Source of the DNA: Monocercomonoides exilis PA203
Taxonomy: Eukaryota; Protista; Preaxostyla
Reading direction: 5' to 3'
Length of the DNA stretch: 64,000 nucleotides
NCBI GenBank assembly: GCA_001643675.2
Contig: LSRY02000010.1
Location: 1,178,001 to 1,242,000, forward strand
The position numbers and the translations under genes are program-made. Each line of letters begins with the position of its first letter. The first letter of the stretch is position 1. The notes below the pieces were generated by a model that saw nothing but the letters and a program-made list of their open reading frames with translations, did no database searches and was not told the origin of the DNA. This document shows, in pieces, positions 6,960-54,337 of the stretch.

Positions 6960-7786
6960 AACACAATCAGTGGAAATGGCTGAGTGAAGCGGAATGGATG
7001 CGAGGCAGAGTATGAGAAGGCAAAGGGCGAAGTTTGAGGGAAATGATTAAACAATCCTTCGGATATTGAAAGATGAGATTTAGGATGCAGAGGGGATGGA
7101 AAAGGACGAGAGCTGGGGAAGAGCACAGAGGAGTCGAAGGAGAGGAGCAGGGAAAGAGCGGGAAAGAGCGAATATCAGGAATAGGGAGCTGAAGTATGTG
7201 AGAAAAGAGGCTGAGTGGAATTGACGTGAGATTTTATGAATGGAGGAATGAGCCAGAGAGGAGAAGGGAGTAAGGAGCGGGCATCTGGGAGGAGATTATT
7301 TGGGGTAGAGAAGAGGGGGAAGGAGAGGATGGCTGGTTGGGGGATGGCGAGGGAGAAGTTTGTGAGGGCGAGTGAGGAATGGGCAGAGAGGAAAAGTGGA
7401 GATTTTGTTGCTGGTTTCACTTGGCAAGTGGAGGAGCAGATGGTTGCAGCTGAGTGGTGTTGGGCAGTGATGAGTGGACAACCAGTGAGAGGGATGATAT
7501 TGAGATGAGTCACACACAAGGAGGTGTTGATGATATTCAGATTTGTTCGAATACAACAAGCATGAACGCTCGATGAGAATATGACTTTTGCTGCACCTAT
7601 GTCATTTTTATTGTAGTATTTGTTGCTGCTGTTTTCAATGCTGATCGTGCTTTTTGGCATCTCCCAATTCATTTCTTGCTGATATTGTTTTTCGGCAATT
7701 CCTCTGCCATTGCTGCAATTAACAACAATAATTATAAGAGCAACAATATTTATTGCAGCTTTTACGTTGGTGGAGATATTCGCCAT
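6960..7786 (-). pseudogene. Truncated 5' fragment (copy C) of the giant receptor-like family
   Basis: MANISTNVKAAINIVALIIIVVNCSNGRGIAEKQYQQEMNWEMPK...LLPDA is nearly identical to the N-termini at 21943 and 53812. Stop at 7175; decayed pyrimidine-rich similarity continues to about 6960. Confidence 0.85.
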
Positions 7787-20309: not shown

Positions 20310-21274
20310 GGGTCAGTAATTTATCATATCCCCTTTTTTTTTATCGGGACATAAATTTTCTGGCTCTCAAGAGCACTTTCAGAAAAAAATAAATAATAGA
20401 AAATAATTAATATATTATAATATACTATTTCAGAAAATATTTTTTCAAATTTTAATTTTTGTGAAAAGATCTGGTGTTTTTTGTTTTATTTTTAAGATCA
20501 AAGACTTGCTCGTATTTTCATGAGCTTTTTGTTTTGAGATTTTTAAGTATTGTTATTGTTATTGAACATAACTTCTTTATAATTTTGGTTATTTTTCATT
20601 GTTTAACACTTCGTTTTTTTATTATTTTTTGCATTTCACTAAATTTCGACAAATTGAAGAATGCGTCTGAATAAATAAGTTTTTTCGTTAATTTGAAAGC
20701 GTAAATATATTAATTATCAACAAATAAAGGTAATCAGAAATAAGAAAATCTTTAATTTTTAATGATCGAGATTATTATTCAAAAAAACATGTTTTTGTGT
20801 ATTTTTGTGTTTTTAACTTCAAATCATATTTTTCATTTCAAAATTTTGGTGATACACATATCAATCAGTTTTTTAACTATTCTTTTATGAACAAAAACAT
20901 GCTAACTCTAATTTCACATTTTATTTTTAATTTTATCGAAATTTAGTGAAATGCAAAAAATAATAAAAAAACGAAGTGTTAAACAATGAAAAATAACCAA
21001 AATTATAAAGAAGTTATGTTCAATAACAATAACAATACTTAAAAATCTCAAAACAAAAAGCTCATGAAAATACGAGCAAGTCTTTGATCTTAAAAATAAA
21101 ACAAAAAACACCAGATCTTTTCACAAAAATTAAAATTTGAAAAAATATTTTCTGAAATAGTATATTATAATATATTAATTATTTTCTATTATTTATTTTT
21201 TTCTGAAAGTGCTCTTGAGAGCCAGAAAATTTAGGTCCCGATTAATTTTTTGGGTACCGACAAATTTCTGACCC
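20310..21274. mobile_element. 965-bp foldback/MITE element with ~345-bp inverted arms, TA-flanked
   Basis: TA|GGGTCAG...CTGACCC|TA. Arms ~20310-20655 and ~20930-21274 are reverse complements, which explains the mirror ORFs 20474+ and 21111-. No coding capacity. Confidence 0.85.
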
Positions 21275-21942
21275 TAATGCAAATTTCATACATTAATATA
21301 GCAAAAAAAAAAATAAATAAATAAATAAAAAGAAAATAAACTATTTGTTTCAAACTTTTTCTGCAACCTTATCATCACAGGTTTTTGATTCCCATGACAA
21401 AATTAATTATTTAAAATTAAAAATTGGAAAAAATATTAGTTAATTCTGTGCAACACAAAAATCAAAAAAATACATATACATTCATGACAAGACAAAACAA
21501 AACCCAATTAATAAAAATAACAACAACAACAATAATAATTTCCTATTGTCAATGAAAAACTATCACATGAAACATTTCGTTTGTCTGAAAAGAATTTTCG
21601 TTGGAAAGCGATTCATTTTCCTTCAACAATGAAAAGTTTCAACCTATAAAATTGAATTTATTGCTTTTCAAAAATTATTAGAATTTGAATATCCAAAAAT
21701 TGTATTCCTTGAAAAGAAACTCTTATAAATACAAAAAAGAGAATAATACGCTTTTCTTTTGAAATCAAAAACAAAAACAAACATTAAACTCAGACAAAAA
21801 ATTCAGCTTCAATATGAAAAAGTTAAAAAATAAATTTTTATTCATCAAGAATTATGTTCAACAAAAATTAATTTTTTCGGAAACAAACAAATATATTGGG
21901 CGCAGGGATTTTTATTTTAAAGTTATTTTCCTATCTTCTTCC

Positions 21943-24900
21943 ATGGCGAATATCTTCACCAGCGCAAAAGCTGCAATAAATATTGTTGCTCTTATAATTA
22001 TTGTTGTTAATTGCAGCAATGGCAGAGGAATTGCCGAAAAACAATATCAGCAAGAAATGAATTGGGAGATGCCAAAAAGCACGATCAGCATTGAAAACAG
22101 CAGCAACAAATACTACAATAAAAATGACATAGGTGCAGCAAAAGTCATATTCTCATCGAGCGTTCGTGCTTGTTGTATTCGAACAAATCTGAATATCATC
22201 AACACCTCCTTGTGTGTGACTCATCTCACATTAGCGCCTCTCGCTGGTTGTCCACTCATCACTGCCCAACACCACTCAGCTGCCACCATCTGCTCCTCCA
22301 TTTGCCAAGTCAACCCAGCAACAAAATCTCCACTTTTCCTCTCTGCCCATGCCTCACTCGCCCTCACCAACTTCTCCCTCACCATCCACCAGCCAGACAT
22401 CCTCTCCTTCCCCCTTTTCTCCGCCCCAAACAATCTCCTTCCAGATGCCCACTCCCCAATCCCCACCTCCTTCTCCATCTCCCACTCCTCTTTCTCCTCG
22501 TTCATCTCCCTCATCCAGCCCTTCCTTTTTTCTCCTTCTTCTTCCCGTCTCCATAACCATCACCAATCCCATACCCACCTCCAAATCCACCTCAATCTCC
22601 ATCTCTCAAACACCCTCTTCTCCAACATCTCCTCTCCTCAATCCCATCCATCTCTTCCATTCCTTCCCTCATACTCACTCAACCCATTCACCTCAACCAC
22701 TTCTTCCTCTTCTTCCATTTCCACCAACACCAACACCAATTCAATCCCCTCCTTCTCCCTTCACTCATCCCTCTCCATCCGCTCAACCATCTTCAAACAC
22801 ACTCACAACCCCATCGATGGAGCCATCCTCCCTTCTCTTAACAACCCATCCACTTCTCTCTCTGCCTTCAACGCTTCTTTTCTCCACCAAACACGTTCTT
22901 TGTCAAATGATGCTGTGGTACATATTGGAACCGAATCTCAACGAGAAACACCTGGAAGATTGACTTCATTTGATGAGAACAATCATCGCTTCGAATGGTG
23001 CGAATGGAATAATTCTGGAGATGGCTCATCTGGAGGTGCGCTTAATGTTGAATGCACAAATGCAAATCTAACAATCTGTTCCTGTTCATATACAAAATGC
23101 TCAAGTAAAGGACATGGTGGAGCGTTATACTGCTTGTATTTGTCAAATGTTATCATCACCAAATCCAATTTCACAAACTGTTCTGCTGCTCATGGAGGAG
23201 CAGCCCACACCGCTTATCCACAGCAAAATTCTATTTATTTGCATTCAGATAATAAAATTGAAAATTGTTCAATATCTAGTTGGTGTGGGACTGGCTGGTA
23301 TTTTTACATTGGCGCTTTTCCATTAAATGGACAGTTCTTGTTTTCCAAATGCAAATGCATTACAAATTTTGGTGGTGATTCTGCTGGTTCTATAACATTT
23401 TATAATCCTCCGGCATCAAAGCCAAATATTTTTAAAATTAATGACTGTCAGTTTATAAACAACAAATTGAATTCTTCTTCAACATATGGTGGCGCTGCCA
23501 TTTACAGCTATTCAACTTATGCCTGGATGAGTGGGACAAAATTCATCTCCTTCTGTTTCTTCGATGGCAATACAGCTGCAAATGGCAGAGGAAACGATGT
23601 ATTCTTCGGTGATAGTTATATCAGCCAATCTCCATTCGAGAATTGCGGATCGACAACCTTATCCAAAAGAGTATGGAATGCGGGAACAGCAGATAACTCC
23701 AATTTCAATGGTTGGTTACCATTTGTAATGCCAAATAAAGTTGTTGCCAACAGCGGAATGGATGCAGATGCCTGTGGCAGACAAGGGCAAACCCCATGCG
23801 CCACTATCGAATATGCTTTGTTCGGCTTTGTTTTTTTTGAATATACTTCCCTTACCCTCCTGAACTCTTCCTTCACTCCTTCTCAGGTACTCTCTTTCCG
23901 TGCCCCAAATGCAAAAATCACTGGAATTGGAACAGATGCAACCATCATCGCCTCCAGTGGCATTCCTCAACCATCATCATCATCTTCTTCTTCATTTTCT
24001 TCATCATCTTCCTCTTCACCAGATCCATCTGCCTCTTCTGCCCTCTTCCAACAAACTCAGGGCTCCCTCACAGTCTCTGCCCTCGCCATCGCCCACAACT
24101 CCACAAACCCCATCACCCCCATCCTCTTCCACCTCTCCGGTAACTCCCCTTCCCTCAACCTCAACACAACCACCATCACCGGAACAACCCCATCTTCATC
24201 ATCAATCACAACTCCCCTCTTCTTCCTCACTGCTGGCTCCCTCGCCCTCAACCACACAGCAATCACCCAACTCACCCTCAACAGCCAAAGCATCTTCCAC
24301 CTCACCTCCCTCACCGCTCCCCTCACCCTCAACTCCTCCAACATCACCCACATCACCTCCACTGCCACCCCCACCAGCTGTGTCCTCTCCTCTGCCACCT
24401 CCCCTGCCCTCTCCATCTCCCTCACCAACTGCACCATGACCAACATCAACTCAGAACAGTTGAGCCAACAAACTGCCACCAATGGCGGGTGCATCTCATT
24501 CGCCTCATCTGCCCCTGCCAACACATTTTCAGTGAGTGATTCCACCTTTTCCAGCTGTTCTGTGAGCGAGGATACAAGTTCTGGAGGAAGAGGCGGTGCT
24601 CTCATGATCGAGTTCAACCATGGCTCACAAGTGTCAGAATCCTCCTTTTGCATCACCAATATCGTGTTTTCAGGCAACAAGGCCAGTGTCGGAAGAGATG
24701 TGTATTTTGTGTGTGAATCCCTTGTCGCTTCTGTGAAGGAACCCTTGTTCACTTTCATGAGAAGCATCACTCAGAAAGACAACTCGGTTGTTGGACATGA
24801 CAGAACAGAAGCATTCGGTGATTGGGATGTGGATTTGTTTATATTCTTTGAAGGTTTCTTTTCTGACACGATATATGTTGATGGAACATCTGGAGTGGAG

Positions 24901-27900
24901 AATGCGTATTGTGGAATGGAGAAGGCACCATGTTTGAATGTGAATTATGGGATGGAGCGTTTGAAGAGACCACAGATTGTTCTGCAGGAGATTATTGTGT
25001 GTTCAAAATCAAAGATGGAAGGGTGTGTAAATATGAGCGGGATGAGTTTGAAGGCAAAAATTAAGGCAATTGTCGAAATCGAATGCCAAAGGGAAGTGAG
25101 TGGATCTGAAGAATGCGTTCTGAAATCAGCATCACTGACAGAAATGAAATTTATTGGAATTGTTGTTCCTTCAAGTTTCAGCAGAACAATCACTGATGTG
25201 ATTGAATCGGGCACTCAAAATGGCGAATTGCATATGAAGAACTGTGAGATGAGTGTTTTTGGAGGGAAGCAAAATACAATTGCATTTTTCTTGATCAAAT
25301 CGACAGGAAAGATGATTGAACTGGACTCTGTCACGATTTCAGATGTGAAATCAGCAGTCTCGTTGTTTTCACTTTCGCTTTCAACAGGAAATGTGAATGA
25401 ACAGGAATACAAGGTGAAACTGTTGAATTGCACACTGGAAGGATTGGAGATTGATAGCGGAGTTGCAGTAGAGGGCAAGGCAGCCGTATTTGAAGGGAAT
25501 GTGGGAGTTGAAATGGTGATGAATGGAAGTACAATTAACGGGACATTGTCAGAGAAGAGCAAAGAAGGAGGAGCACTGCAGATAGCGTTGAGTGAAGGAG
25601 GATTTATGACAATTGAAAATAGCTCATTTTCTGGATGTGTCTGTGAGAACGGGAGTGAGAGAGGAAAAGGAGGATTCTTGTATTTGGATTGCCAAAATTG
25701 CTTTGAAGAAAAGCCATTTATTTTTGATGTTGGAGTGACTTTTGAGAACAATAATGCAGCAATTGGAAAAAATGTGTTCATTTTGGGAAAGGATTTTAAT
25801 TCTTCTGTGACAAATGCTTCGTTCAAGTTTGATTATTCATCAATGATAGATGATAAAAATTTGTTTGTGGGAAGTGATAGAAAACATCAAGAAAAGGATT
25901 TGTTCATGTTCCTCGTTCCATTCAGCTCATTTGAGATATTTATTTCATCGAGTGGATTTGATGTTGCAAGATGTGGAAGCGAAGAAGAGCCATGTTTCAC
26001 GATGTGGAAAGGGATGGAAAACATGAAAAAGGAGAATGGAAAGAAGACAATGCAAATTGAAGGATCAACTGTTATTCGAGATTCATTCAACTTATCCAAT
26101 TTATTGATCAAAAAAGCTACTTCAATAGGAGAAGAGAACACGAAAACAGTCTTGAATTTTGAAAAGGCAGCTGGAAGTCAACTGGAGTATTTCATGGGAA
26201 ATGATGATCATCTTGAATTGACGAATATCCATCTCCAACTGACGTCTGGATTTGACAATTCAGCCAAAACAATTATTTCAAACAAAGAAGGAGCTTTGGT
26301 GATAACTGGATGTTCATTCCATTCAGAGGCAGAAGTGAACAATGGATTTGATTGTGTATTTGTGGATGCGATTGGAGGAACTGTGGAAGTGAATGATTTG
26401 TCTGTTGAATCATGCGATGTTGGAGATAGCATTTTTGTCATTCACGATGCTGGAGTTGTTTGCCATTTTGTGAATGTTCGAGTGGAATCATTGAATGAAA
26501 GCAGAGGATGCATTTTGTCAATCAAGAAATCTGAAGCAGGATTGAAAATTAATGAAGAAGATGAAGAATGTGTGAATATTGAGATTGGCAAATCATCATT
26601 TTCAGGAGTGAAGAGAAGTGACAATGGAGCAAGCATTTTGGAGTCAATGAGCGAGAAAAAGATTTGCTTGGTTGTGAATGAGAGCAGCATAACAGAAGAT
26701 AAAGCAGAATTGAGTGAAAAAGGAGGGGCAATATTTTTCACATTGGGAAAGTCTGGTTCAATGAAAATAGTTGAATCAACAATCAGTCATTGCAGCTGCA
26801 GTATTGGTTCAGGGAAAGGAGGGGGAGTGTATTTGGCAACAAAGGAAACAGGGCTTCTCAATTTCACATTTGTGGGGATGAAGTTCAGTGCAAATACAGC
26901 AAAAGTGGGGAATGATATTTTCATTGAATGCTTCAACATCTCATCACAGATCAATGAAACTCAATTTCAATTTGATCTTCGAGAAGGTCATTATTCACGA
27001 ATTAATGTGATATATGGAAGAGATGAATGCGATTATCCGAATGATACAGATCTGATTGGATTTGTAACAATCCATCAGAGCGATATAATAATTGTTAGTA
27101 GTATAAATGGTTCAAATGACAGACAATGTGGAACAAACACACTTCCATGTGATTCGATTGATTATGGCCTTCTACATTTGACTTCAGAGCTAATAAGTCA
27201 AATTCTCATTGTTGAAGAGAGTGTAATAAGTGGAGAGATAAATTTGAAAGAGATGTGCTTGAGCTCGAAGAATAGAGATTTATGCAAAGTTGAAGTGAAA
27301 CAAGGAATTGAAAAAACAAAGGATTCTGTAATTTCAACAACAGGAGAAGTTTCTTTATTGAGAATAAGATTTGTGTTTGATTCAGATTTCATTTCTTCAC
27401 ATGAATCATTAATATCACCGGAGGGAGGGATTCTTGAAATTATGAATTGTTCTTTTTCGTCAAAACAACCTAATGAAGAAGGAAATGCAACTTTTGCAGA
27501 CATTCAATTTCACATTTTCAACATGGCAAAAGGAGAATTACAACTTGACGGATGTTCTTTGTCAAATCTCATTCTTCAAAAATCTGCATTATATCTTTTA
27601 TCTCCTCTTCCATCAGTTATTGATTCATTAACAATATCCAATTCAACAATGGAAACTTCTCTGTTAGATATTAATGAATGTGGTCAATTAACAATTAAGG
27701 ATTTCAATACAGAAAATATCACAGTTGAAGGAAATGAAGAATCATTGATATCTTGCCTGTCAGCGAAAAAGACAATTCAATTGACAAATTGCACAATGTG
27801 TGGAGTCAGTTCAAAGACCGCAAAAGGGAAATTGATGAAATTGGAGAATTGCTTGGATGTGAAAATGGACAGTTGCGTTTTTGATGGAAGTGCAAAGGAA

Positions 27901-29982
27901 AGAAATGAAAAGAATTTGAATTCCGAAGGGGAGATGTGCAAATGGGATGGATCTCTTGTGGATGTTGCGAAGAGTTCAGTGGTGATGAAAGATTCAACAA
28001 TTGCAAATTCACCAGAAGGTGGAATAACAATGAATGGAGGGGCATTGACTGTTAATGATGGAAGATTTGAAAACAACAATCCATCAATTGAAAGATATCC
28101 ATCATTGAGAAGAAATATCATCTGTTCAGATTCTGGAACATTGAATGTGGTGAGTTTGAAAGGAGGAGATGGAGTTTTGCCAAACACTTCACTTTGGATG
28201 TTAAATGAAGGGTGCAGTTTTGAAGGGATTGTTTCAGAGAGAGATTCATCATTCTTCATTCCAGTTCTGGAAAGTGTGGAAGCAAAGGAAGAAGCTGATA
28301 GAATGAAGCTGATATTCAAAGGAATGCTTCTTATCCCATGTAATCTATCATTCTCGGTTGTGAAGAGGAAGGGAGAAGAGAAGGAGATTGAAAAACATGA
28401 TTTTGATTCAAATGGATTTTTGTCAGAAAGAGAAGCAGAAGGACGTGTTGTAAAAGATCTCATCAGAAGTTGTGGAGATGAAGTCGAAGTTAGTGTGTAT
28501 GTTTTGTTTGGAAATACAGAATCTCCTTCATCAACAAATTCAATCGTTCTGAAGAATGCAAGTGAAAATCAGTCAAGCGGAAATGAAAAGATTGTTGAAG
28601 GAGGAAAAGAAGGGAAATCGTTATGGATGTGGATTGTGATAGTTATGGCAGTTGTTCTATTAATTATTCTGATTATATCAATAATATTGGCGATGAGATG
28701 GAGAAAGCAAAAGAGAAGAACAGAAGAATTGGAGATAATCGTGGAAGACAATATTAAAAAGGATCCGAAGCTGATTGAGATGGTGACGATGGAGATGTCA
28801 CCAGAGGAGCAGTGGAGGAGAGCTGAGAGGGAGGCAGAGAAAAAGAACGATGAAAGGATGAAGAAGAGAATAAATGGAAAGCAGATGGTGCATTCTGAGT
28901 CCGAAGAGCATTTGCTGTCTGAGAGTGGATCAACAGAATACATCTTGGGAAAGGATTCAGACAAGATTCCAGAATGGGCACTGGAGAAGGCTGACGAGAA
29001 AGAAGAAGATATTTCGAGAAAGAGAACTCCATCTCCATCCATTTCATCCACTTCAACAACAGATACTTCAGACACGGAATCCACATTTGTTCGCATGGAA
29101 GATGCTTGTCCGACCACCTCGTCGATGTCGAACTTGGTGGATGCCATGGCCTGTTCGTCTCCTCATGAGAAGCTGATTGTGGACTTGAGGGATTCGCTGT
29201 TCATGTTGCTTCATGGAAGGAATAAGACAAAGGAGATGGCAATAGGAAGTTTGCAGGAGAGGGAGCAGACAGCTGCCCAAATCCTGTTCTGGGTAGCCAA
29301 TCTCGCGCTTCACTCATTTGACGAAATGGAAAATCCTCTTCAATCTCTTTCCAATCTGAGCCCTCACATTGTGTTGTTCTCTGAGCACATGGTCATCTGC
29401 ATTGTGATGCACTCAGATCTTTTATCAGATGACAGTTCAGACTCATCATCCATCTCTTCATCAACTATTGTGACATCTGCCAGTGATAATGATGATGATG
29501 ATGACTCTCTGCCTTCATCGGCTTTTGAGGATGAAGATTATTACAAAAAAGAGTGTTTAAGGTGGAAGGCACCAGAGCTGCTGATGAACAAAAACATTGG
29601 AGCAACAAATGAATCAGTTTCATTCTCGATTGGGATGATGCTGTGGGAGTGCTTGACACTTCAAATACCGTTTGGAGATTATGAAGCAGAGATAGCAGGG
29701 CAGAAGATATCCAATGGTGAAAGGCCAAGCTTGGAGAGTGTGAGTGAATCGAGACTTCACAATCTGGTGTTGAGTTGCTTGTTGCAGAAAGTGGGAAGCA
29801 GGCCAACGCTGCTGGATGTGAAGAAGGAACTGTTTGGGATGTATGGAAAAGGCGGATGGGTGATGACAGAAACGGATGCAGTGGGGGTTGTGCCGATCAG
29901 GGTTAATTATGGAAGTGGAAGGAGAAGGGAAAGCGGAGCGATATCAAAAGAAATATTGCTTGTTGAGGAGAAAAATGAATGA
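21943..29982 (+). CDS. Giant intronless receptor-like protein A: signal peptide, beta-helix/Pmp-like GGA repeats, TM helix, pseudokinase C-lobe
   Basis: Open frame from 21814; likely start MANIF at 21943, where homology with copy C begins and a signal-like segment follows. GGA(I/L) and FxxNxA motifs, four Gx(D/E)..CG....PC modules, TM LWMWIVIVMAVVLLIILIISIILAM, then LRWKAPELL..SFSIGMMLWECLTLQIPF..GERP..RPT. Confidence 0.88.
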   Translation: MANIFTSAKAAINIVALIIIVVNCSNGRGIAEKQYQQEMNWEMPKSTISIENSSNKYYNKNDIGAAKVIFSSSVRACCIRTNLNIINTSLCVTHLTLAPLAGCPLITAQHHSAATICSSICQVNPATKSPLFLSAHASLALTNFSLTIHQPDILSFPLFSAPNNLLPDAHSPIPTSFSISHSSFSSFISLIQPFLFSPSSSRLHNHHQSHTHLQIHLNLHLSNTLFSNISSPQSHPSLPFLPSYSLNPFTSTTSSSSSISTNTNTNSIPSFSLHSSLSIRSTIFKHTHNPIDGAILPSLNNPSTSLSAFNASFLHQTRSLSNDAVVHIGTESQRETPGRLTSFDENNHRFEWCEWNNSGDGSSGGALNVECTNANLTICSCSYTKCSSKGHGGALYCLYLSNVIITKSNFTNCSAAHGGAAHTAYPQQNSIYLHSDNKIENCSISSWCGTGWYFYIGAFPLNGQFLFSKCKCITNFGGDSAGSITFYNPPASKPNIFKINDCQFINNKLNSSSTYGGAAIYSYSTYAWMSGTKFISFCFFDGNTAANGRGNDVFFGDSYISQSPFENCGSTTLSKRVWNAGTADNSNFNGWLPFVMPNKVVANSGMDADACGRQGQTPCATIEYALFGFVFFEYTSLTLLNSSFTPSQVLSFRAPNAKITGIGTDATIIASSGIPQPSSSSSSSFSSSSSSSPDPSASSALFQQTQGSLTVSALAIAHNSTNPITPILFHLSGNSPSLNLNTTTITGTTPSSSSITTPLFFLTAGSLALNHTAITQLTLNSQSIFHLTSLTAPLTLNSSNITHITSTATPTSCVLSSATSPALSISLTNCTMTNINSEQLSQQTATNGGCISFASSAPANTFSVSDSTFSSCSVSEDTSSGGRGGALMIEFNHGSQVSESSFCITNIVFSGNKASVGRDVYFVCESLVASVKEPLFTFMRSITQKDNSVVGHDRTEAFGDWDVDLFIFFEGFFSDTIYVDGTSGVENAYCGMEKAPCLNVNYGMERLKRPQIVLQEIIVCSKSKMEGCVNMSGMSLKAKIKAIVEIECQREVSGSEECVLKSASLTEMKFIGIVVPSSFSRTITDVIESGTQNGELHMKNCEMSVFGGKQNTIAFFLIKSTGKMIELDSVTISDVKSAVSLFSLSLSTGNVNEQEYKVKLLNCTLEGLEIDSGVAVEGKAAVFEGNVGVEMVMNGSTINGTLSEKSKEGGALQIALSEGGFMTIENSSFSGCVCENGSERGKGGFLYLDCQNCFEEKPFIFDVGVTFENNNAAIGKNVFILGKDFNSSVTNASFKFDYSSMIDDKNLFVGSDRKHQEKDLFMFLVPFSSFEIFISSSGFDVARCGSEEEPCFTMWKGMENMKKENGKKTMQIEGSTVIRDSFNLSNLLIKKATSIGEENTKTVLNFEKAAGSQLEYFMGNDDHLELTNIHLQLTSGFDNSAKTIISNKEGALVITGCSFHSEAEVNNGFDCVFVDAIGGTVEVNDLSVESCDVGDSIFVIHDAGVVCHFVNVRVESLNESRGCILSIKKSEAGLKINEEDEECVNIEIGKSSFSGVKRSDNGASILESMSEKKICLVVNESSITEDKAELSEKGGAIFFTLGKSGSMKIVESTISHCSCSIGSGKGGGVYLATKETGLLNFTFVGMKFSANTAKVGNDIFIECFNISSQINETQFQFDLREGHYSRINVIYGRDECDYPNDTDLIGFVTIHQSDIIIVSSINGSNDRQCGTNTLPCDSIDYGLLHLTSELISQILIVEESVISGEINLKEMCLSSKNRDLCKVEVKQGIEKTKDSVISTTGEVSLLRIRFVFDSDFISSHESLISPEGGILEIMNCSFSSKQPNEEGNATFADIQFHIFNMAKGELQLDGCSLSNLILQKSALYLLSPLPSVIDSLTISNSTMETSLLDINECGQLTIKDFNTENITVEGNEESLISCLSAKKTIQLTNCTMCGVSSKTAKGKLMKLENCLDVKMDSCVFDGSAKERNEKNLNSEGEMCKWDGSLVDVAKSSVVMKDSTIANSPEGGITMNGGALTVNDGRFENNNPSIERYPSLRRNIICSDSGTLNVVSLKGGDGVLPNTSLWMLNEGCSFEGIVSERDSSFFIPVLESVEAKEEADRMKLIFKGMLLIPCNLSFSVVKRKGEEKEIEKHDFDSNGFLSEREAEGRVVKDLIRSCGDEVEVSVYVLFGNTESPSSTNSIVLKNASENQSSGNEKIVEGGKEGKSLWMWIVIVMAVVLLIILIISIILAMRWRKQKRRTEELEIIVEDNIKKDPKLIEMVTMEMSPEEQWRRAEREAEKKNDERMKKRINGKQMVHSESEEHLLSESGSTEYILGKDSDKIPEWALEKADEKEEDISRKRTPSPSISSTSTTDTSDTESTFVRMEDACPTTSSMSNLVDAMACSSPHEKLIVDLRDSLFMLLHGRNKTKEMAIGSLQEREQTAAQILFWVANLALHSFDEMENPLQSLSNLSPHIVLFSEHMVICIVMHSDLLSDDSSDSSSISSSTIVTSASDNDDDDDSLPSSAFEDEDYYKKECLRWKAPELLMNKNIGATNESVSFSIGMMLWECLTLQIPFGDYEAEIAGQKISNGERPSLESVSESRLHNLVLSCLLQKVGSRPTLLDVKKELFGMYGKGGWVMTETDAVGVVPIRVNYGSGRRRESGAISKEILLVEEKNE

Positions 29983-30312
29983 ATGAATGGAAATATGATA
30001 AGATGTGTGACACTGAAAATCATTCAAGGAACAAATATTTGATTAATTGGGTGTGTGAAGAAAAGAAAGAAATATGAATGGTTGTTGCGATGAAAACAGG
30101 TTGGATATTGGACAAACAGCAATTATGAAAAGCAACACCTTCGAAATAAGAAGAAATGATTTTTAAAACGAGATTGAAGGAGGAAAAAAAAAACAGAAAA
30201 GTGGTTTTTAAATCACGAATTATTTGGAATGGCAAAAATGTTTTTTTCTCAAAATATTGAAATGAATGATGTTTTTGTTCAAATTCGATTAGATGTTCAT
30301 TTTTTTGGAATA

Positions 30313-30524
30313 TGGCTGATCCTTTTTGAAATCAAACTTTTGTTCGAGTTTTGATGATAAAATTTTCCTCAATGGGAAAATAAAGATTATTTATCTTTGT
30401 ATGTATATCTTGATTGAAAGTTTTAACTTGTGTTTTGCTCTTTTTTTTTTCCTTATTCTCATTGAGACAAAAATTTTTTGGTTGAAAACTCGAATGAAAG
30501 TTTGATTTCAAAAAGGATCAGCCA
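30313..30524. mobile_element. Small MITE-like element with ~40-bp TIRs in the 3' flank of gene A
   Basis: TA|TGGCTGATCCTTTTTGAAATCAAACTTT...AAAGTTTGATTTCAAAAAGGATCAGCCA|TA. Confidence 0.65.
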
Positions 30525-33397
30525 TACGCTTTGAAGTTTTCATTTATTTTGACTTTCGTCCTATTTATTTTGTTTATGACATTGCATGAATAATTGTTTT
30601 TGAAGCTATATCATTGTTTTTTCAAAATAGATATTCTTTATTTTTCAAAAATTTATTAAGTTTTGAGAGACAAATGAAAAATTTTTCAATTCTTTTGTTG
30701 GATGTTTTTGATATTTATTTCTCTCTCTTCTTTTTGTCTTGTTATAACTCCATTACAAATCAAAATGCTTGATATTTTTCCTTCATTCAGTTTTTTTGTT
30801 CATTTTCCCAACTGGCAGGTTTTATTTCGAGTATTTATGTGTGTTTTTATTTGAAGGTTTTCTTGTAATTCTTGTAATTCAAATATTTCTTTTTTCAACA
30901 CCTTTTATATTCAGCATCCACTTCATTCTTACAACAAAAATAATGCAAATTTGTTAATGTTAAAGACAGGGGAACAAAAATTTCTTCATTAGACACAAAA
31001 TGAAAAATGAAAATGAAAAGAAGAAAGAAATGAAAAGAAGCCAACATCATTTGTTTAATAAAGAAAAAATAGTTTTTTTCTTTTTTTTTTTTTAAATGAA
31101 AATTAAAATAAACTATTACTAAAACTTCTTAAGATTTTTCAAAGCACTTTGGAAAAGATTTGTTGATAGCATCTGTAATATCTGGTCGTTGTTTCTCTTT
31201 TGTCAGTGACAAATTGAGAAAAAAATATTCCTCAACTGACATTTAGTTTCGAATATAATAAATATTGGGAACTTGACCATATTTATTTAAACTTCGATTT
31301 TTTCAAAATAATAAAAATTGCAGTATATCGATTTTCAAATTAATTATTGCAGTAATTAAGAATTACAATATCGTTAAAAATAACCCTTTTTGACAAATCA
31401 TAAATATCTTGTTAGTCATTTTGTCATTTTTTTCAATTTTCTCTTGTAATGTCACAGAGGCATAAGGGAAAAATTGAAGTTATGAGCAAATTTTTCCAAT
31501 AAATTAATAGATTAATAAATAAATTAATAAATAAATATTCTTATTCACTTTTAAAGGAATGCATATTTGATAGAGCTGAAAAGAGAAATGTTATTGAAAA
31601 GATTCAAATAACAAATATTTTTGAAAAAGAGAGAATTTTCTTGAAATAAAAGACAACTATTCTTGGATTTTCACAGAAAATGGTTCACAACATGTCAACA
31701 ATAACACAATATTCGATAATGCAGAACAGCGAAATCTGATTGTTCAATATTCGATTCAATCAATTGAAAAGAACACTTGCCTCAACATCCCGAATCTCTG
31801 TTTGTTATTTTTTCCATTTTTTGATTTTGAATGTGTTATTCTATTCGAAAATGAAAGTGGAAATTTTTCACATTTTTTTTTAACTGCACACATTTTTATC
31901 TATTTGAACACTCAGTAATTGAAATCGATAAAAATGTCAGAAGTCTCAAATAGAATAAAAATTTTTCTTTTTTATCTTTTCAAGAAAATGGCACATGAGG
32001 GAAAATACAAACTTTCAAGCTTTTTTTTGAACAAATGGGGGAAAATTTTTCTTTTCAAGCATTTTCAATAAAAAATAATGCACTTTTAATTGACTTTTTT
32101 TGATAAAAATACACAATAAAAATGATTCCATTATTCTACATTCGTGAAATGCCACTAAACTTCATGTTGTAAAATCAATGATATCTGATCCCTGATGTGC
32201 AAATCCAATTTTTTGAAAATCAGAGAAAGCGAAACAAAGTTATTAGTGAAGCAAATTTTTTGAACTTTGTGCATAAAAAGCTTGAAAGTCCATATTTTTC
32301 CCCAAATCATTTATTCTTAAATGAACGCATCACTTCATTAAACTTACAGAGATTTCAAAATAAATAGAATTCTGCTATCTGCAAACAAGTATCAAAGAAT
32401 TCATTTCTTTATGCTTTGTGACATGATAAATAGATTAAATGATCTGAATCCATTTCAATTGATCTTTTTTATCACAAAAAGCTCATCCAAGGAACAAAAT
32501 TTTTAAATGAAAAAATTTGAAATGTCAAATTCTGTCACATTTGTTTTGCCCGTATTTGATCAACTCTTTTTTTTTTGATTATTTTTTAAATAATAAGGTA
32601 ATGAAATAATCATGTTGATTTTCAATAATACCAATTGTTTTTTGTTTTGAAAGAGTTTTTCTAGAGTTTAAAATATTTCGAAGTTTTTGATTAAATCATA
32701 ATTAAAAATGATTTTTTTCAAATCCAGAACAATTAATTTCTATTTATAACCAAATATCAAATGTCAATAAGATCAAAATGTGTTGCAATTATCACTTATT
32801 TGTCTTTTGCAATAAAACTTAAAACAAAATGAGCATATTTGTCTTTAATAATAATTGATTCATATTTTTGAAAGCCATAACATTTCACAAAGTTTTCATG
32901 AAAATAAATCTTTGTGTGTGTTGTTCAATTTGAAAAATCCCGAATGTTTTGTTGAAAAAATAAAAGTAATATTTCATGTTTTTATTCAATTTCTATTCAC
33001 TTGAACGAATCTCATAAGAATGTTTAAATAATATTACAAAGTCACAGCTTCCATTTTTGTGAAGTTTCGCAAGTTTCAACAAAAATTTGATCAGCTCATG
33101 ATATATTAATTTATTTGATATTTAAACGTTTTCGACCTGGGTGATTATTTTTGAAATCATCCATTTTTTCGGAGAATGTGTAATTTTCTCTTTCACGGTT
33201 GTTTGCAAAAGAATTTCCATAAAAGCGTTTCGTGTTTAAAAATTACTGTCTTTCAAATGCATGTTATCATTAAAAGACAGAGAAGCACATTTAAGATTTT
33301 AATGAAAATATTAGATTGATTTCTAAATGTTAGCAATAAATTGTCAATTCGAAATTTTTGATTGGAAAAACATGAAATCAAAAAGAATCACACACCT

Positions 33398-40100: not shown

Positions 40101-40891
40101 TTTTCTTGTTGATTGGGTTCATCTGACGAACAAAAGAGGATGGAAGCTGCTGAAAACAACTCCGGTTTGGATTATTTACTGTTCTTTTGATATTTTTTTT
40201 TTCAAATATATTCTCATTCGATTAATGAAAACTTTGATATTTTCACTCTTTATGCACTAATTTAAATTCATTTTATTTTTTTTTACCAAATTATTTGCTA
40301 CACTGTTTATTTCCAAAAAGATGGGGAGCATCAAGAATTCCTTGAAAATGCTGAAAAACAAAGCGCTTTTGGAGATTGGGCGTGTGTGCAACTGTCTTCA
40401 CACTCACTCCATCTGCCCTCTCATCACATCGGAACAAGCAAGTAACAAATTTCCATCCAACCTTTCTTCAGCTTCTTCTTCATCGTCTTCTGCTTCTTTA
40501 CCAAATCCATTCTCGTCTGCATCTCAGATTGCCAAAAAGACTAAGCACACACTCTTCCACATCGATAGTATTCCGGTTTGTTGTTATCATTAATTGAAAA
40601 TAGTTTAAATAATAATAATTATTTTTTTGAAACATTCGTGCGAATTTTTATGTTTATAAAACAACCAATTAATATGACAACAAATTCCTTCATTCCATCT
40701 TATTGCTTAATTTGAAATTTGTATCTTTGATTACACTAACAATTTTTCCTTATGAATCACAGGAATTTGCGCCAACCCCACTTCATCTGAATACCATTAA
40801 CAGCATCTCTTCGTCCCTTCAAACAACATTCACTCGTCAAGAAAATGAGCTTCTACAGTGCATAACATATCTCCAAACTATCAAATTTTGA
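34186..40891 (+). CDS. Large helical-repeat protein, probably NatB auxiliary subunit (NAA25/MDM20)-like, with Ser-rich insertions; 5 exons
   Basis: Introns 34546-34588, 38450-38643, ~40165-40320 and ~40576-40761 join the ORFs in frame. The N-terminal TPR-like segment (YNRGKWKSALSCIEK..FQILKASI), LLLARVQLLRETGA and AGDMEKMEDSVQLKRRLDFS resemble NAA25 segments by recall. Gene model is strong, identity moderate. Confidence 0.55.
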
Positions 40892-45952: not shown

Positions 45953-48900
45953 TCATTCATTTTTCTCCTCAACAAGCAATATTTCTTTTGATATCGCTCC
46001 GCTTTCCCTTCTCCTTCCACTTCCATAATTAACCCTGATCGGCACAACCCCCACTGCATCCGTTTCTGTCATCACCCATCCGCCTTTTCCATACATCCCA
46101 AACAGTTCCTTCTTCACATCCAGAAGCGTTGGCCTGCTTCCCACTTTCTGCGACAAGCAACTCAATACCAGATTGTGAAGTCTCGATTCACTCACACTCT
46201 CCAAGCTTGGCCTTTCACCATTGGATATCTTCTGCCCAGCAACCTCTGCTTCATACTCTCCAAATGGGATCTGAAGTGTCAAGCACTCCCACAACATCAT
46301 CCCAATCGAGAATGAAACAGATTCCTTTGTTGCACTCATCTTCTTGTTGATCAGCAGTTCTGGTGCCTTCCACCTCAAACACTCTTTCTTGAAGGCATCC
46401 TCATCCTCAAAAGCCGATGAAGGCAGAGAGTCATCATCATCATCATTATCACTGGCAGATGTCACAATAGTTGATGAAGAGATGGATGATGAGTCTGAAC
46501 TGTCATCTGATAATAAGTCAGAATGCATCACAATGCAGATCACCATGTGCTCAGAGAACAGCACAATATGAGGACTAAGATTTGCTAAAGACTGAAGAGG
46601 ATTTTCCATTTCATTAAAGGAATGAAGAGCAAGATTAGCAACCCAGAACAGAATCTGAGCAGCTGTCTGCTCCCTCTCCTGCAAACTTCCTATTGCCATC
46701 TCCTTTGTCTTATTCCTTCCATGAAGAAGCATGAACAGCGAATCCCTCAAGTCCACAATCAGCTTCTCGTGAGGAGACGAACAGGCCATGGCATCCACCA
46801 AGTTCGACATCGACGAGGTGGTCGGACAAGCATCTTCCATGCGAACAAATGTGGATTCCGTGTCTGAAGTATCTGTTGTTGAAGTGGATGAGATAGAAGG
46901 TGATGGAGTTCTCTTTCTCGAAATATCTTCTTCTTTCTCATCAGCCTTCTCCAGTGCCCATTCTGGAATCTTGTCTGAATCCTTTCCCAAAATGTATTCT
47001 GTTGATCCACTCTCAGATAAAAGGTACTCTTCAGACTCAGAATGCGCCATCTGCTTCCCATTCATTCTCTTCTTTATTCTCTCACAATTCTTCTCCTCAG
47101 CCTCTCTTTCTGCTCTCTTCCACTGCTCTTCCGGTGACATTTCCATTGTGACCATCTCAATCAGTTTCGGATCCTTCTTCACTGTATCATTCACAATCTC
47201 TTCCAGTTCTTCTGTTCTTCTCTTTTGCTTTCTCCATCGCATCGCCAATATTATTGATATAATCAGAATAATTAACAGAACAACTGCCATAACTATCACA
47301 ATCCACATCCATAACGATTTCCCTTCTTTTCCTCCTTCAACAATCCTTTCATCCCCATTTGTCTTTGTTTCACTTGCATTCTTCAGAATAAATGACTGAG
47401 TTGACGAAGGAGATTCTGCATTCCCAAACAAAATATTAACGCTCACCTCAACATCATTTCCACAACTGCTGATGAGATCCTTTGCCACACTTCCTTCTGC
47501 TTCTCTTTCTGATAAAAATCCATCTGAATCAAAATCATGCTTTTCAATATCTTTCTCTTCACCTTTCCTCTTCACAACTGAGAATGACAGATTACATGGG
47601 ATAAGAAGCATTCCTTTGAATATCAGCTTCATTCTATCAGCTTCTTCCTTTGCTTCCACACTTTCCAGAACTGGAATGAAGAATGATGAATCTCTCTCTG
47701 AAACAATCCCTTCAAAACTGCACCCTTCATTTAACATCCAAAGTGAAGTGTTTGGCAAAACTCCATCTCCTCCTTTCAAACTCACCACATTCAATGTTCC
47801 AGAATCTGAACAGATGATATTTCTTCTCAATGATGGATATCTTTCAATTGATGGATTGTTGTTTTCAAATCTTCCATCATTAACAGTCAATGCCCCTCCA
47901 CTTATTGTTATTCCACCATCTGGTGAATTCGATATTGTTGAATCTTTCATCATCACAGAACTCTTCACAACATCCACAAGAGATCCTTCCCATCTGCACA
48001 TCTCTTCTTCTTCATTAAAATTCTGCTCATTTATTTCTTTTGAACTTCCATCAAAAATGCAACTGTCCATTTTCACATCCAAGCAATTCTCCAATTTCAT
48101 CAATTTCCCTTTTGCTTTGTTTGAGCCAGCTCCACCAATTGTGCAATTTGCCAATTGCATCTTCTTTTTCGCTGACAGGCAAGATATCAATGATTCTTCA
48201 TCTCCTTCAACTGTGATATTTTCTGTATTGAAATCCTCAAGTGTAAATTGTCCACATTCATTTATATCTATCAGAGAAATTTCACTTGTTGAATTGCAAA
48301 TGGTTAATGAATCAATAACTGATGGAAGAGAAGATGAAAGATATATTGCTGTTTCTTGAAGAATGAGATTTGATATCTTGCATTCCATAAGTTGCAATTC
48401 TCCGTTTTTCATATTAATAATACAAAATGGAATGTTTGCAAAATCTTCTTTTCCTTCTTCATTAGGTTGTTTTGACGAAAAAGAACAATTCATAATTTCA
48501 AGAATTCCTCCTTCCGGTGAAATAAGTGATTCGTGAGAAGAGATGAAATTCGAGTCAAATACAAAGCTGACTCTCAGCAATGAAACTTCTCCTGTTGTTG
48601 TTACCAAAGCATCCCTTGTTCTTTCAATCCCTGATTGCACTTCAACTTCACAATATTCTCTCTTCTTCGAACTCAAACTCATTTCCTTCAGATTTATCTC
48701 TCCACTTATTACACTCTCTTCAACAATGAGAATTTGACTTATTAGCTCTGAAGTCAAATGTAGAAGGCCATGATCAATCGAATAACATGGAAGTGTATTT
48801 GTTCCACATTGTCTGTCATTTGAACCATTTATACTACTAACAATTATTATATCGCTCTGATGGATTGTTACAAATCCAATCAGATCTGTATCATTCGGAT

Positions 48901-53812: not shown

Positions 53813-54337
53813 GGAAGAAGATAGGAAAATAACTTTAAAATAAAAATCCCTGCGCCCAATATATTTGTTTGTTTCCGAAAAAATTAATTTTTGTTGAACA
53901 TAATTCTTGATGAATAAAAATTTATTTTTTAACTTTTTCATATTGAAGCTGAATTTTTTGTCTGAGTTTAATGTTTGTTTTTGTTTTTGATTTCAAAAGA
54001 AAAGCGTATTATTCTCTTTTTTGTATTTATAAGAGTTTCTTTTCAAGGAATACAATTTTTGGATATTCAAATTCTAATAATTTTTGAAAAGCAATAAATT
54101 CAATTTTATAGGTTGAAACTTTTCATTGTTGAAGGAAAATGAATCGCTTTCCAACGAAAATTCTTTTCAGACAAACGAAATGTTTCATGTGATAGTTTTT
54201 CAATACAATAGGGGATAAGTATTTTTATTGTTATCGTTATTATTTGGGTTTTGTTTTGTCTCGTAATGTGTGTTTGAAAATATTGATTTTTGAATTTCAT
54301 AAAATTAACTGATATTTTATCCAATTTTTAATATATA

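What the first reader, a model, noticed from the sequence alone, without database searches (positions are those of the whole stretch)
21943..29982. Mosaic identity between paralogs A and B: constant frameworks alternating with variable cassettes
Seen: near-identical tracts at the first ~230 codons, 24030-24560 (QQTQGSL...SDSTFSSC), ~26825-27245 (vs ~48690-49110), ~28037-28350 (vs ~47580-47900), the TM helix, ~28945-29275 and ~29700 onward. These alternate with diverged tracts at ~22630-23990 and ~24560-25660, the latter a barely alignable module of different length. Inside the constant N-terminus A has KNDIGAAKVI (shared with copy C) while B has NHNIVTAQNI. Inference: sharp-edged identity that includes silent sites points to segmental gene conversion or module swapping rather than uniform divergence after one duplication.
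Basis: partly seen in the sequence, partly recalled or inferred. Interest (0 to 1): 0.8.

Follow-up and report, generated by a model that had tools for sequence, protein, structure and literature searches.

The report
Mosaic inverted twin receptor-pseudokinase genes
Two neighbouring, oppositely oriented 8-kb genes of the mitochondrion-less gut flagellate Monocercomonoides exilis are true patchworks: stretches with no differences at all alternate with stretches as different as any two family members, because the pair has copied DNA onto each other and traded pieces with other family members, a common way for large surface-protein families to evolve.

Summary
A (21943-29982, +) and B (53812-45953, -) are arms of a 9.5-kb inverted duplication. 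Eight A=B tracts hold 3,222 columns with 8 differences (dS 0.00-0.01). Between them dS is 0.2-0.54 in frameworks and 1.6 in the head module.

The reading as segmental conversion or module swapping is supported, with four corrections.
1. Identity runs into unique non-coding flanks (390/390 and 929/933 nt). The outermost 74-129 nt of the duplicated unit are only 84-89% identical, so the duplication is old and the identical tracts are recent A-B conversion.
2. Third paralogs take part. B is 98-99% identical to D (about 96 kb away, one in-frame stop) and to a gene on another contig, where A and B differ by 36-42%. A carries 224 nt identical to D.
3. The "barely alignable module" is not diverged orthologous sequence. 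A holds repeat unit a and B holds unit b (about 25% aa identity). At least 13 paralogs carry a and b in tandem.
4. The tract 24030-24373 is conserved family-wide, not A-B specific.

The genes belong to M. exilis's largest family (at least 530 proteins, published only as tyrosine kinases). They have beta-helix modules outside, a TM helix and a half-kinase tail. This scan found the same mosaicism on other windows of this genome. It is a new member of a known kind, of moderate interest.

The parts
21943..29982 (+). Gene A: 2,679-aa type I membrane protein. Order of parts: signal peptide, S/P-rich region, head module, S/T linker, repeat unit a, three further modules, stalk, TM helix, half-kinase tail.
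   Evidence: A single open frame. PF07714 matches the C-lobe only. CG..PC module ends at aa 611, 990, 1344 and 1729. The public gene model starts at internal Met 596.
45953..53812 (-). Gene B: 2,619-aa inverted paralog of A, carrying repeat unit b instead of a.
   Evidence: CG..PC motifs at aa 608, 970, 1285 and 1669.
21424..21552 (+). Upstream edge of the duplicated unit (partner 54330-54203). Old divergence: 84% identity plus 23 gap positions.
21553..22572 (+). A=B conversion tract covering 390 nt of 5' flank and the first 210 codons. It is two exact runs (569 and 395 nt) split by the 56-nt island 22122-22177.
   Evidence: Logan contigs show roughly 1.6-3x the depth of the A-specific tracts. 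The only other letter listed between 21553 and 22121 is a minority G>A at 22093, where other paralogs also contribute depth.
22122..22177 (+). Island. A has the version of copy C (KNDIGAAKVI), and B has 13 differences here. The best other match to B's version is C13:1197267 (92% over 48 nt).
23140..23990 (+). Head module, a variable cassette. A-B dS is 1.6. A has no relative above 78% anywhere in the genome. B's counterpart (52612-51812) is a composite of G-like, D-like and C7-like patches.
   Evidence: The AU test rejects A+B.
24030..24559 (+). S/T-rich linker. It is conserved at nucleotide level across the whole family (mean pairwise 89-94%, pS 0.17). Only 24374-24559 is an A-B-specific exact run.
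   Evidence: Contig depth is several hundred times that of unique tracts.
24559..25662 (+). Repeat unit a (368 aa) of gene A, modelled as a parallel beta-helix. It is 87% identical to the same unit in paralog G and absent from B.
50270..51229 (-). Repeat unit b (320 aa) of gene B. It is 88% identical to unit b of paralog E, about 25% aa identical to unit a, and absent from A.
26824..27243 (+). A=B conversion tract (420 nt, 3 differences).
28035..28346 (+). A=B conversion tract (312 nt, exact). It overlaps a 224-nt tract, 28243-28466, in which A is identical to paralog D. The different end points imply at least two events.
29044..29165 (+). A=B exact run in the cytoplasmic tail. A further run lies at 29422-29534.
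29812..30916 (+). A=B conversion tract covering the last 56 codons and 934 nt of unique 3' flank (1,105 columns, 5 differences).
30917..30990 (+). Downstream edge of the duplicated unit (partner 45019-44946). Identity is 66/74 (89%), and homology ends beyond it.
51863..52462 (-). Patches in B shared with paralog D (C2:1126741-1128082). There are 5 mismatches in 52462-52213 and 4 in 52112-51863, where A differs at 104 and 90 positions. 52012-51813 also matches the C7 gene with 4 mismatches in 200 nt.
7266..7786 (-). Copy C: an isolated N-terminal fragment (about 174 codons), 94.5% identical to A and 92.0% to B.

Best explanation
A and B are the two arms of an old inverted duplication of about 9.57 kb (A 21424-30990, B 54330-44946). 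Each arm holds one member of the giant receptor-pseudokinase family of Monocercomonoides exilis. The arms have since been re-edited by homologous-recombination repair that copies short stretches (about 80-1,100 nt) from a paralogous template, i.e. non-crossover gene conversion.

Two kinds of exchange are superimposed.
(i) Arm-to-arm conversion between A and B made at least eight tracts with essentially no differences. The two longest cover the gene ends plus the unique non-coding flanks, where no other paralog can serve as template.
(ii) Ectopic conversion with other family members is seen with D (about 96 kb away on the same contig), with G, and with a gene on contig C7. These patches fall inside the ectodomain, above all in B's head module, which is bracketed by two tracts conserved across the family.

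Separately, the two genes differ in repeat register. A kept beta-helix unit a and B kept the neighbouring unit b of an array that other paralogs carry as a-b. This is best explained by recombination between repeat units out of register, or by import of the region from a paralog of the other architecture.

Shown: the mosaic itself, zero dS in the tracts, third-party tracts, non-orthology of a and b, and older edges. Inferred: the repair mechanism, the direction of each transfer, and the register-shift origin of a-only and b-only genes.
For: Tracts: 8 A=B tracts hold 3,222 columns with 8 differences, against 39.7% differing columns outside them. dS is 0.00-0.01 inside and 0.20-0.54, 1.6 or saturated outside. 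Permutation gives p<0.001 for A-B, B-D, A-D and B-G runs.

Flanks and edges: the non-coding flanks are 390/390 and 929/933 identical, while the outermost edges are 84% (plus 23 gap positions) and 89% identical.

Segment trees: (A,B) has support 100 in the N-terminus, 26824-27243 and the tail. B groups with D (93) and with C7 (97) in the head, where the AU test rejects A+B at p 9.8e-8 and 9.7e-10.

Third-party patches: B differs from D at 5 of 250 and 4 of 250 positions where A differs at 104 and 90. A is identical to D over 224 nt. These patches are short, internal and flanked on both sides by non-donor sequence. The partners lie in inverted orientation (A-B), about 96 kb away (B-D), or on another contig (B-C7). 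Crossovers would have rearranged the chromosome, so non-crossover conversion is the economical reading.

Modules: a and b are each 87-88% identical to the same unit in other genes. They lie in tandem in at least 13 loci and in F, P10 and P13. They are about 25% aa identical to each other (E about 1e-13).

Family level: outside the tracts A-B identity equals the family mean, and A-B framework pS (0.27-0.34) equals the family mean of 0.34.

Reads: contigs of three DNA runs (2016 and 2022) reproduce A-specific 22986-23962 without a difference. The identical 5' tract has roughly 1.6-3x that depth in the two 2022 runs and about 1x in the shallow 2016 run. The only other letter listed there is a minority one at 22093.

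Literature: M. exilis lacks NHEJ and encodes a fairly complete homologous-recombination pathway (PMC6759080).
Against: In the framework segments (25700-26820, 27244-28034, 28347-29043) the AU test does not reject A+B as sisters (p 0.36-0.55). Ordinary old divergence could therefore account for those parts without ectopic exchange.

No near-identical donor exists in the assembly for A's head (best 76-78%), for unit a (87%) or for unit b (88%). Their history is not resolved.

Direction and reciprocity of transfers cannot be read from one genome.

The read evidence is from fragmented short-read contigs of the same strain.

The assembly was polished with ten rounds of Pilon (PMC8767320). This could turn 99% into 100% identity inside tracts, although it cannot create the mosaic.
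Confidence: 0.8

Rival explanations
1. One recent event, either a re-duplication or a single 9.4-kb arm-to-arm conversion from 21553 to 30916, made A and B identical throughout. All present differences are later imports from other paralogs, and the identical tracts are what is left over rather than separate new conversions.
For: Identity is highest exactly where no other paralog offers a template, namely the unique flanks, the signal-peptide region and the last 90 codons. Of the A-B framework differences, 89% are states also present in other sampled paralogs, and only 20 and 27 sites are private to A and B. B demonstrably holds imported patches.
Against: With flanks at 0-0.4% divergence, the imports would be very recent and should have near-identical donors. 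Genome-wide, A's head has nothing above 78%, and units a and b nothing above 87-88%. About two thirds of the interior would have to be overwritten while 1,323 nt of flank took 4 substitutions and one 1-nt gap. The 89% figure is also expected from homoplasy in a large, divergent family, and other pairs give 83-92%.
Confidence: 0.13
2. Assembly or polishing artefact. Canu consensus or ten rounds of Pilon with multi-mapping short reads copied one paralog's sequence onto the other and created false identical tracts or chimeric joints.
For: The assembly is Nanopore-based and was polished with Nanopolish and ten rounds of Pilon (PMC8767320). The family has hundreds of members. One site in the island region (22166) reads A instead of G in the only contig of run X2 that covers it.
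Against: Polishing changes single bases. It cannot produce alternating blocks of 0% and 15-40% divergence with indels. A-specific tracts 22986-23594 and 23565-23962 are reproduced without a difference by contigs of runs from 2016 and 2022. The identical 5' tract is one contig (21546-21995) at 164.8 depth, against 92-104 for the unique tracts, with one minority other letter listed nearby at 22093. That is what two truly identical copies give. Third-party patches are bounded by sequence unique to B.
Confidence: 0.04
3. There has been no exchange. Divergence after one duplication was uniform, and the identical tracts are simply under very strong purifying selection.
For: The tail is strongly constrained (dN/dS 0.09-0.13), and the linker is conserved family-wide.
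Against: Selection on protein does not remove synonymous differences. There is 1 synonymous difference in about 590 codons, against pS 0.27-0.39 next door. Nor does it keep 1,323 nt of AT-rich non-coding flank at 99.6-100%. In the tracts the other paralogs are only 80-92% identical to A. The head trees reject A+B.
Confidence: 0.01

Closest known systems
Segmental gene conversion in large surface-protein families of protists and bacteria (Plasmodium var, Trypanosoma VSG mosaics, Anaplasma msp2, Borrelia vlsE, Giardia VSP); named from my own knowledge
   Same: These are large families of surface proteins. Variable cassettes are bracketed by conserved tracts. Short patches are copied between paralogs, including from a copy with a premature stop (D). 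Individual genes are mosaics of a shared pool of variants.
   Different: There is no evidence here for an expression site, for silent donor archives, for directional transfer or for switching. The host is a commensal gut flagellate, and nothing here or in the papers read links the family to immune evasion. The conserved part is a cytoplasmic half-kinase, so the proteins look like receptors rather than coat antigens.
Sequence exchange in clustered plant receptor and resistance gene families (e.g. RPP8, PMC6771003; also Cf-9 and Xa21-type receptor kinases, from my own knowledge)
   Same: These are receptor-like proteins with a repeat-built variable ectodomain and a kinase-type tail. Paralogs are clustered. 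Intergenic exchange and unequal recombination change sequence and repeat number.
   Different: The repeat fold differs (beta-helix modules of about 320-390 aa rather than LRRs). The tail is not a complete kinase. The family is about ten-fold larger and dispersed over many contigs.
Arm-to-arm gene conversion in large inverted repeats (palindromes of primate sex chromosomes); from my own knowledge
   Same: Inverted duplicates on one chromosome are kept nearly identical by intrachromosomal conversion, including in non-coding sequence. The outer boundary of homology limits the tracts.
   Different: Here homogenisation is patchy (about one third of the arm) and competes with imports from hundreds of other paralogs. 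The arms are 9.5 kb with a spacer of about 14 kb that holds ordinary genes.
M. exilis 'protein tyrosine kinase' family (332 predicted, 320 TKL-like; PMC6759080) that overlaps 'unclassified repeats' (PMC8767320)
   Same: It is very probably the same gene family. The closest database proteins are MONOS_ models, a few of them named 'putative Protein tyrosine and serine/threonine kinase', and they carry PF07714.
   Different: In the passages of these two papers that I searched, the family appears only as kinases that overlap repeats. I found no description of the ectodomain, of the incompleteness of the kinase domain or of mosaicism. A further search found no paper linking Monocercomonoides with gene conversion or pseudokinases.

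Membership tests
Interlocus (segmental) gene conversion between paralogs | Tracts of (near-)zero synonymous divergence flanked by clearly diverged sequence | tested here: met
   dS is 0.000-0.011 in 8 tracts, against 0.20-0.54 or more outside. There are 8 differences in 3,222 columns, and the edges are sharp.
Interlocus (segmental) gene conversion between paralogs | Runs of identity longer than chance, given the pair's overall divergence (GENECONV-type permutation) | tested here: met
   A-B runs span 148-324 polymorphic sites, against a null 99.9th percentile of 51. B-D runs are 119 and 98, A-D 95, B-G 113 and 86. All have p<0.001. Caveat: site-rate heterogeneity is only partly controlled.
Interlocus (segmental) gene conversion between paralogs | Phylogenetic incongruence between adjacent segments | tested here: met
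   (A,B) has support 100 in the N-terminus, 26824-27243 and the tail. The AU test rejects A+B in 23140-23560 (p 9.8e-8) and 23561-23990 (p 9.7e-10). A+B is not rejected in the S/P-rich region, the two frameworks or the stalk/TM segment.
Interlocus (segmental) gene conversion between paralogs | Non-reciprocal transfer with an identifiable donor and acceptor | not testable with these tools
   One genome only. Direction would need an outgroup isolate or population data.
Active protein kinase (Pkinase / PK_Tyr_Ser-Thr) | Complete catalytic domain with an N-lobe (Gly-rich loop, VAIK lysine), an HRD catalytic loop and DFG | tested here: not met
   Pfam matches only profile positions 164-258 of 258. 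The PDB alignment starts at the DFG position of RET, which reads D-D-S here, and covers only the C-lobe. No N-lobe or HRD match was found.
M. exilis expanded 'tyrosine kinase-like' family | Close homology to annotated MONOS_ proteins carrying PF07714 | tested here: met
   530 proteins have E<=1e-5 to the tail region. The best 120 include the window's own two gene models (listed without a source name). The other 118 are all M. exilis, at 67-81% identity.
Right-handed parallel beta-helix (pectin-lyase-like) fold | Stacked three-strand coils forming a right-handed helix | tested here: inconclusive
   The AlphaFold2 model of unit a has pLDDT 88.6 and pTM 0.87 and is nearly all short strands. All listed Foldseek PDB matches are beta-helix proteins, but the matches are weak (best E 8e-4, TM 0.37-0.44). 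Pfam Beta_helix is below threshold (E 0.14).
Chlamydial Pmp-repeat proteins | Significant PF02415 repeats (GGA[ILV], FxxN) | tested here: not met
   PF02415 gives E 0.41 with no stretch passing. GGA-type motifs are present but are not diagnostic.
Programmed antigenic-variation cassette system | A single expression site fed unidirectionally from silent donor copies, with switching over time | not tested
   No time series or expression data were available. Only hints were found: partner D has a stop codon, and an RNA run holds exact A-specific contigs.

The most novel reading that the evidence does not exclude
The family is built for cassette exchange. Two tracts kept nearly identical at nucleotide level in hundreds of genes bracket the variable head module: the S/P-rich N-terminal region and the S/T linker (pS 0.17, against 0.34-0.55 elsewhere). 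They would serve as recombination anchors. In an organism without end-joining, every break in a receptor gene is then repaired from a paralog, broken copies such as D included. This would continually generate new ectodomain combinations on a constant signalling tail, a selected diversity-generating arrangement in a non-pathogenic, mitochondrion-less eukaryote.
Probability: 0.15. Interest if true: 0.75.

Novelty: new member of a known kind. Interest (0 to 1): 0.42.

Why it matters
The result shows, with clean internal controls, how the largest gene family of M. exilis evolves. Members recombine with each other rather than diverging independently. Trees, orthology calls and copy counts for this family, and the 'unclassified repeats' that cover about a third of the assembly, therefore cannot be read as simple duplication histories.

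The A/B pair is a useful natural experiment. The unique flanks record only arm-to-arm conversion, the outermost edges record the age of the duplication, and the interior records competition with the family pool.

It also corrects the published label. These are giant beta-helix receptor-like proteins with an incomplete kinase domain, not tyrosine kinases.

The general phenomenon is well known from other multigene families, and this scan already met it on other windows of this genome. The value is therefore confirmatory and descriptive rather than conceptual.

Tried and rejected
- Sequence fetching. I worked with 15 full-length paralogs, 15 3'-halves and one 5'-part. A whole-protein search of the genome failed once.
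- Alignment. E-INS-i alignment of the 17 genes timed out, so FFT-NS-2 was used instead.
- Quick trees. The quick trees suggested that A and B are not sisters in the frameworks. The AU test found better trees with A+B held together, so I withdrew that claim.
- B as parental copy. I considered B the parental copy because its upstream flank matches paralog P05. I rejected this because the match is a foldback repeat present in both orientations.
- Merlin transposon. I considered that A and B might be arms of a Merlin-type transposon, as earlier notes of this scan describe elsewhere. The spacer holds a kinesin and other ordinary genes, and Pfam named no transposase in the spacer ORFs I scanned (two 34601-40257 ORFs and the kinesin). 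A GTPase-like ORF is named only from its sequence.
- Module extraction. My first extraction of units a and b used overlapping columns and compared b with itself. This was redone.
- Private versus shared states. This test cannot separate exchange from homoplasy, so I use it only as 'consistent with'.
- Pfam on ectodomain modules. Nothing significant was found.
Full report
**What is there**

The window is G000:C2:1178001-1242000 of an 82.3-Mb, 101-contig assembly. The closest database proteins are all Monocercomonoides exilis MONOS_ models, and the assembly statistics match the published Nanopore assembly (PMC8767320).

Two very long open frames face each other tail to tail. Gene A is 21943-29982 on the + strand (2,679 aa from the Met that starts a signal peptide). 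Gene B is 53812-45953 on the - strand (2,619 aa). Between them lie ordinary genes: a kinesin and several unannotated ORFs, one of them GTPase-like by its sequence.

blastn shows that the homology is wider than the coding sequence. It runs from A 21416 to 30990 and from B 54332 to 44946, so this is an inverted duplication of about 9.5 kb per arm.

A third copy, C, is only an N-terminal fragment (7786-7266, -). It is 94.5% identical to A and 92.0% to B.

**The protein**

Pfam recognises only the C-terminal half of a kinase domain (profile positions 164-258 of 258). Against solved structures the alignment begins at the DFG position of RET, which reads D-D-S here, and covers only the C-lobe. So this is a kinase remnant, not an enzyme.

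The ectodomain is a chain of units of about 320-390 aa, each ending in a CG..PC motif. An AlphaFold2 model of one unit is confident (pLDDT 88.6). All its Foldseek matches are right-handed parallel beta-helices, though weakly (TM 0.37-0.44).

At least 530 proteins share the tail. The literature describes the family only as the largest family, 'tyrosine kinases', overlapping 'unclassified repeats' (PMC6759080; PMC8767320). The public gene models of A and B start at internal methionines (2,084 and 2,220 aa). The upstream part is open, and its signal peptide is conserved among paralogs.

**Checking the observation**

The exact runs of at least 80 nt are 21553-22121, 22178-22572, 24374-24559, 26824-27137, 27164-27243, 28035-28346, 29044-29165, 29422-29534, 29812-30125, 30192-30679 and 30682-30916.

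Merged, these are eight tracts of 3,222 columns with 8 differences. Outside them 39.7% of columns differ, and most tract edges have 13-17 differences within the next 60 columns.

Synonymous divergence by region:

| Region | dS |
|---|---|
| Identical tracts | 0.000-0.011 |
| S/T linker | 0.20 |
| Frameworks, stalk and tail | 0.34-0.54 |
| Head module | 1.6 |
| 24560-25662 | saturated |

Shuffling the order of polymorphic sites gives a null longest run of about 32 sites (99.9th percentile 51). The observed A-B runs are 148-324 sites.

**The ends of the duplicated unit date it**

The 5' flank 21553-21942 is 390/390 identical, and the 3' flank 29983-30916 is 929/933 identical. These flanks have no similarity to the flanks of other paralogs.

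Beyond them, still within the duplicated unit, identity drops. It is 84% with 23 gap positions in 21424-21552 and 66/74 in 30917-30990. After that the homology ends.

Conversion needs homology on both sides of a tract, so the outermost edges of a duplication escape it and keep the true age. The duplication is therefore old, with roughly 11-16% neutral divergence, of the same order as framework pS of 0.27-0.34. The identical tracts are recent arm-to-arm conversions.

**Third parties**

I scanned A and B in 150-nt windows against 15 full-length paralogs, 15 3' halves and one 5' part.

- Outside the A=B tracts, A-B identity is no higher than A's identity to other paralogs, and it equals the family mean. 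Framework pS for A-B (0.27-0.34) also equals the family mean of 0.34.
- B differs from paralog D (C2:1120989-1128082, about 96 kb away, same strand) at only 5 of 250 positions in 52462-52213 and 4 of 250 in 52112-51863. A differs from B there at 104 and 90 positions.
- 52012-51813 also matches a gene on contig C7 with 4 mismatches in 200 nt.
- 53289-53094 and 52582-52487 match paralog G.
- A is identical to D over 28243-28466 (224 nt). This overlaps the A=B tract 28035-28346 with different end points, so at least two events are stacked there.
- D carries one in-frame stop.

Segment trees agree with this. (A,B) has full support in the N-terminus, 26824-27243 and the tail. B groups with D (93) and C7 (97) in the two halves of the head, and the AU test rejects A+B there (p 9.8e-8 and 9.7e-10).

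In the frameworks and the stalk the AU test does not reject A+B. There the data do not require ectopic exchange.

The third-party patches are short and internal. Their partners are inverted, 96 kb away or on another contig, so crossovers would have rearranged the chromosome. Non-crossover gene conversion is the economical mechanism. This is an inference. It fits the reported absence of end-joining and the presence of homologous-recombination repair in M. exilis (PMC6759080).

**The 'barely alignable module'**

A's 24560-25700 finds other paralogs at 81-87% identity, and B's 51230-50230 finds others at 80-88%. In at least 13 loci both matches lie next to each other in the order a then b.

The alignment of 17 genes gives three architectures:

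| Architecture | Genes |
|---|---|
| a only | A, G, H |
| b only | B, D, E and six others |
| a-b in tandem | F, P10, P13 |

In the tandem genes, residues 1-362 match A's unit (72-79% aa) and residues 358-677 match B's unit (72-77% aa). Units a and b match each other at only about 25% (E about 1e-13).

So A and B do not carry diverged versions of one module. They carry different neighbouring repeat units. Both units begin with a similar GG.GG..(L)DC motif, and so does the next unit. Out-of-register recombination between units, or import from a gene of the other architecture, is therefore the likely origin. That origin is inferred, not shown.

- The tract 24030-24373 is 89-97% identical between A and B. 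Other paralogs are as close or closer, and family pS there is only 0.17. It is a family-wide constant tract, not an A-B tract.
- The island 22122-22177 is real. A and C share one version, and B has 13 differences in 56 nt. The best other match in the genome is 92% over 48 nt on contig C13. That is suggestive of a short import, but no more.

**Artefact check**

The assembly was made with Canu from Nanopore reads and polished with Nanopolish and ten rounds of Pilon. I laid the contigs of three DNA runs (2016 and 2022, same strain) and one RNA run on 21400-27300 (5,901 letters).

- The A-specific tracts 22986-23594 and 23565-23962 are reproduced without a difference in all three DNA runs.
- The identical 5' tract appears as one contig (21546-21995) at 164.8 depth in run X2, against 92-104 for the unique tracts. 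The ratio is about 2-3x in X1 and about 1x in the shallow X3.
- The only other letter listed in 21553-22121 is a minority G>A at 22093, where depth from other paralogs also piles up.
- This is what two truly identical copies give. Polishing cannot in any case create blocks of 15-40% divergence with indels.
- The RNA run holds exact A-specific pieces (23681-23840, 24801-24900). This hints at transcription, but DNA carry-over is not excluded.

**Rival readings**

The main rival is that one recent event made the arms identical throughout and everything that differs now was imported later.

- In its favour, identity is highest where no other template exists, and 89% of A-B framework differences are states also seen in other paralogs.
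- Against it, such recent imports should have near-identical donors. A's head has nothing above 78% in the genome, and units a and b nothing above 87-88%.
- The 89% figure is also the family norm (83-92%) and is expected from homoplasy.

I give this rival about 0.13, an artefact 0.04 and selection alone 0.01.

**Novelty**

Patchwork genes made by conversion among paralogs are standard for large surface-protein and receptor families. For M. exilis my searches found no description of it.

Earlier follow-ups of this scan reached the same conclusion on other windows of this genome (s1-464009, s1-463902, s1-463939, s1-464049). I treated those notes as leads and re-derived everything here.

This locus adds an inverted pair whose unique flanks and older edges separate arm-to-arm conversion from the age of the duplication. 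It also adds the a/b register difference and a stop-bearing partner (D). Nothing shows a programmed switching system.

Noticed in passing
window 20340-21245 and 54331-54760: A foldback (palindromic) element lies just upstream of each gene. The one near A has 323-nt arms, 98% complementary, with a 260-nt loop, and ends about 170 nt before the duplicated unit. The one near B has 139-nt arms at 94% plus 51-nt outer arms at 100%, and it abuts the duplication boundary at 54331. The two are unrelated in sequence. B's element also occurs, in both orientations, upstream of paralog P05 on contig C24. Palindromes at a duplication edge could be a cause (fold-back priming) or a coincidence.
   Followed up: partly
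window 24030-24560 (and 22218-22800): The S/T-rich linker is the most conserved part of the gene at nucleotide level across the family (mean pairwise 89-94%, pS 0.17). The strongly constrained tail has pS 0.55. Summed contig depth there is several hundred times that of unique tracts. This points either to a conversion hot spot or to a constraint on the DNA or RNA itself.
   Followed up: partly
G000:C2 about 1127645 (paralog D, loci L003+L031): Paralog D, the partner of the clearest B patches, has a single in-frame stop in its head module (…CENASL*ISSCSF…). The rest of the 2,396-aa alignment to B stays in one frame. It may be a recently disabled copy or a sequencing error.
   Followed up: partly
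window 56815-57011 (+): An isolated 197-nt fragment of a family head module (matching A aa 598-660), 80-85% identical to six paralogs, lies 3 kb upstream of B.
   Followed up: no
window 7266-7786 (-): Copy C is an N-terminal fragment whose homology starts exactly at the start codon and ends after about 174 codons, inside a 222-aa ORF. It is 94.5% identical to A.
   Followed up: partly
window 32017-32305: A dispersed repeat downstream of A matches the flanks of paralogs P13, L014 and L016 at 70-73% identity.
   Followed up: no
window 22166: In run X2 the only contig over the island region reads A instead of G (157.6 of 157.6 depth). X1 shows A in about a third of its depth, and X3 shows the reference letter. 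This may be heterogeneity in the culture or a consensus error.
   Followed up: no
window 21943-23730 and 53812-52613: The public gene models of A and B start at internal Met 596 and Met 400 (2,084 and 2,220 aa). They omit the signal peptide, the S/P-rich region and most of the head module, all of which are open and conserved among paralogs.
   Followed up: partly
paralogs D and E (G000:C2:1119489-1129300 and 1072786-1082800): D and E, direct repeats 46 kb apart, share long exact runs at their 3' ends and beyond the stop codon. They look like a second pair with homogenised ends.
   Followed up: no
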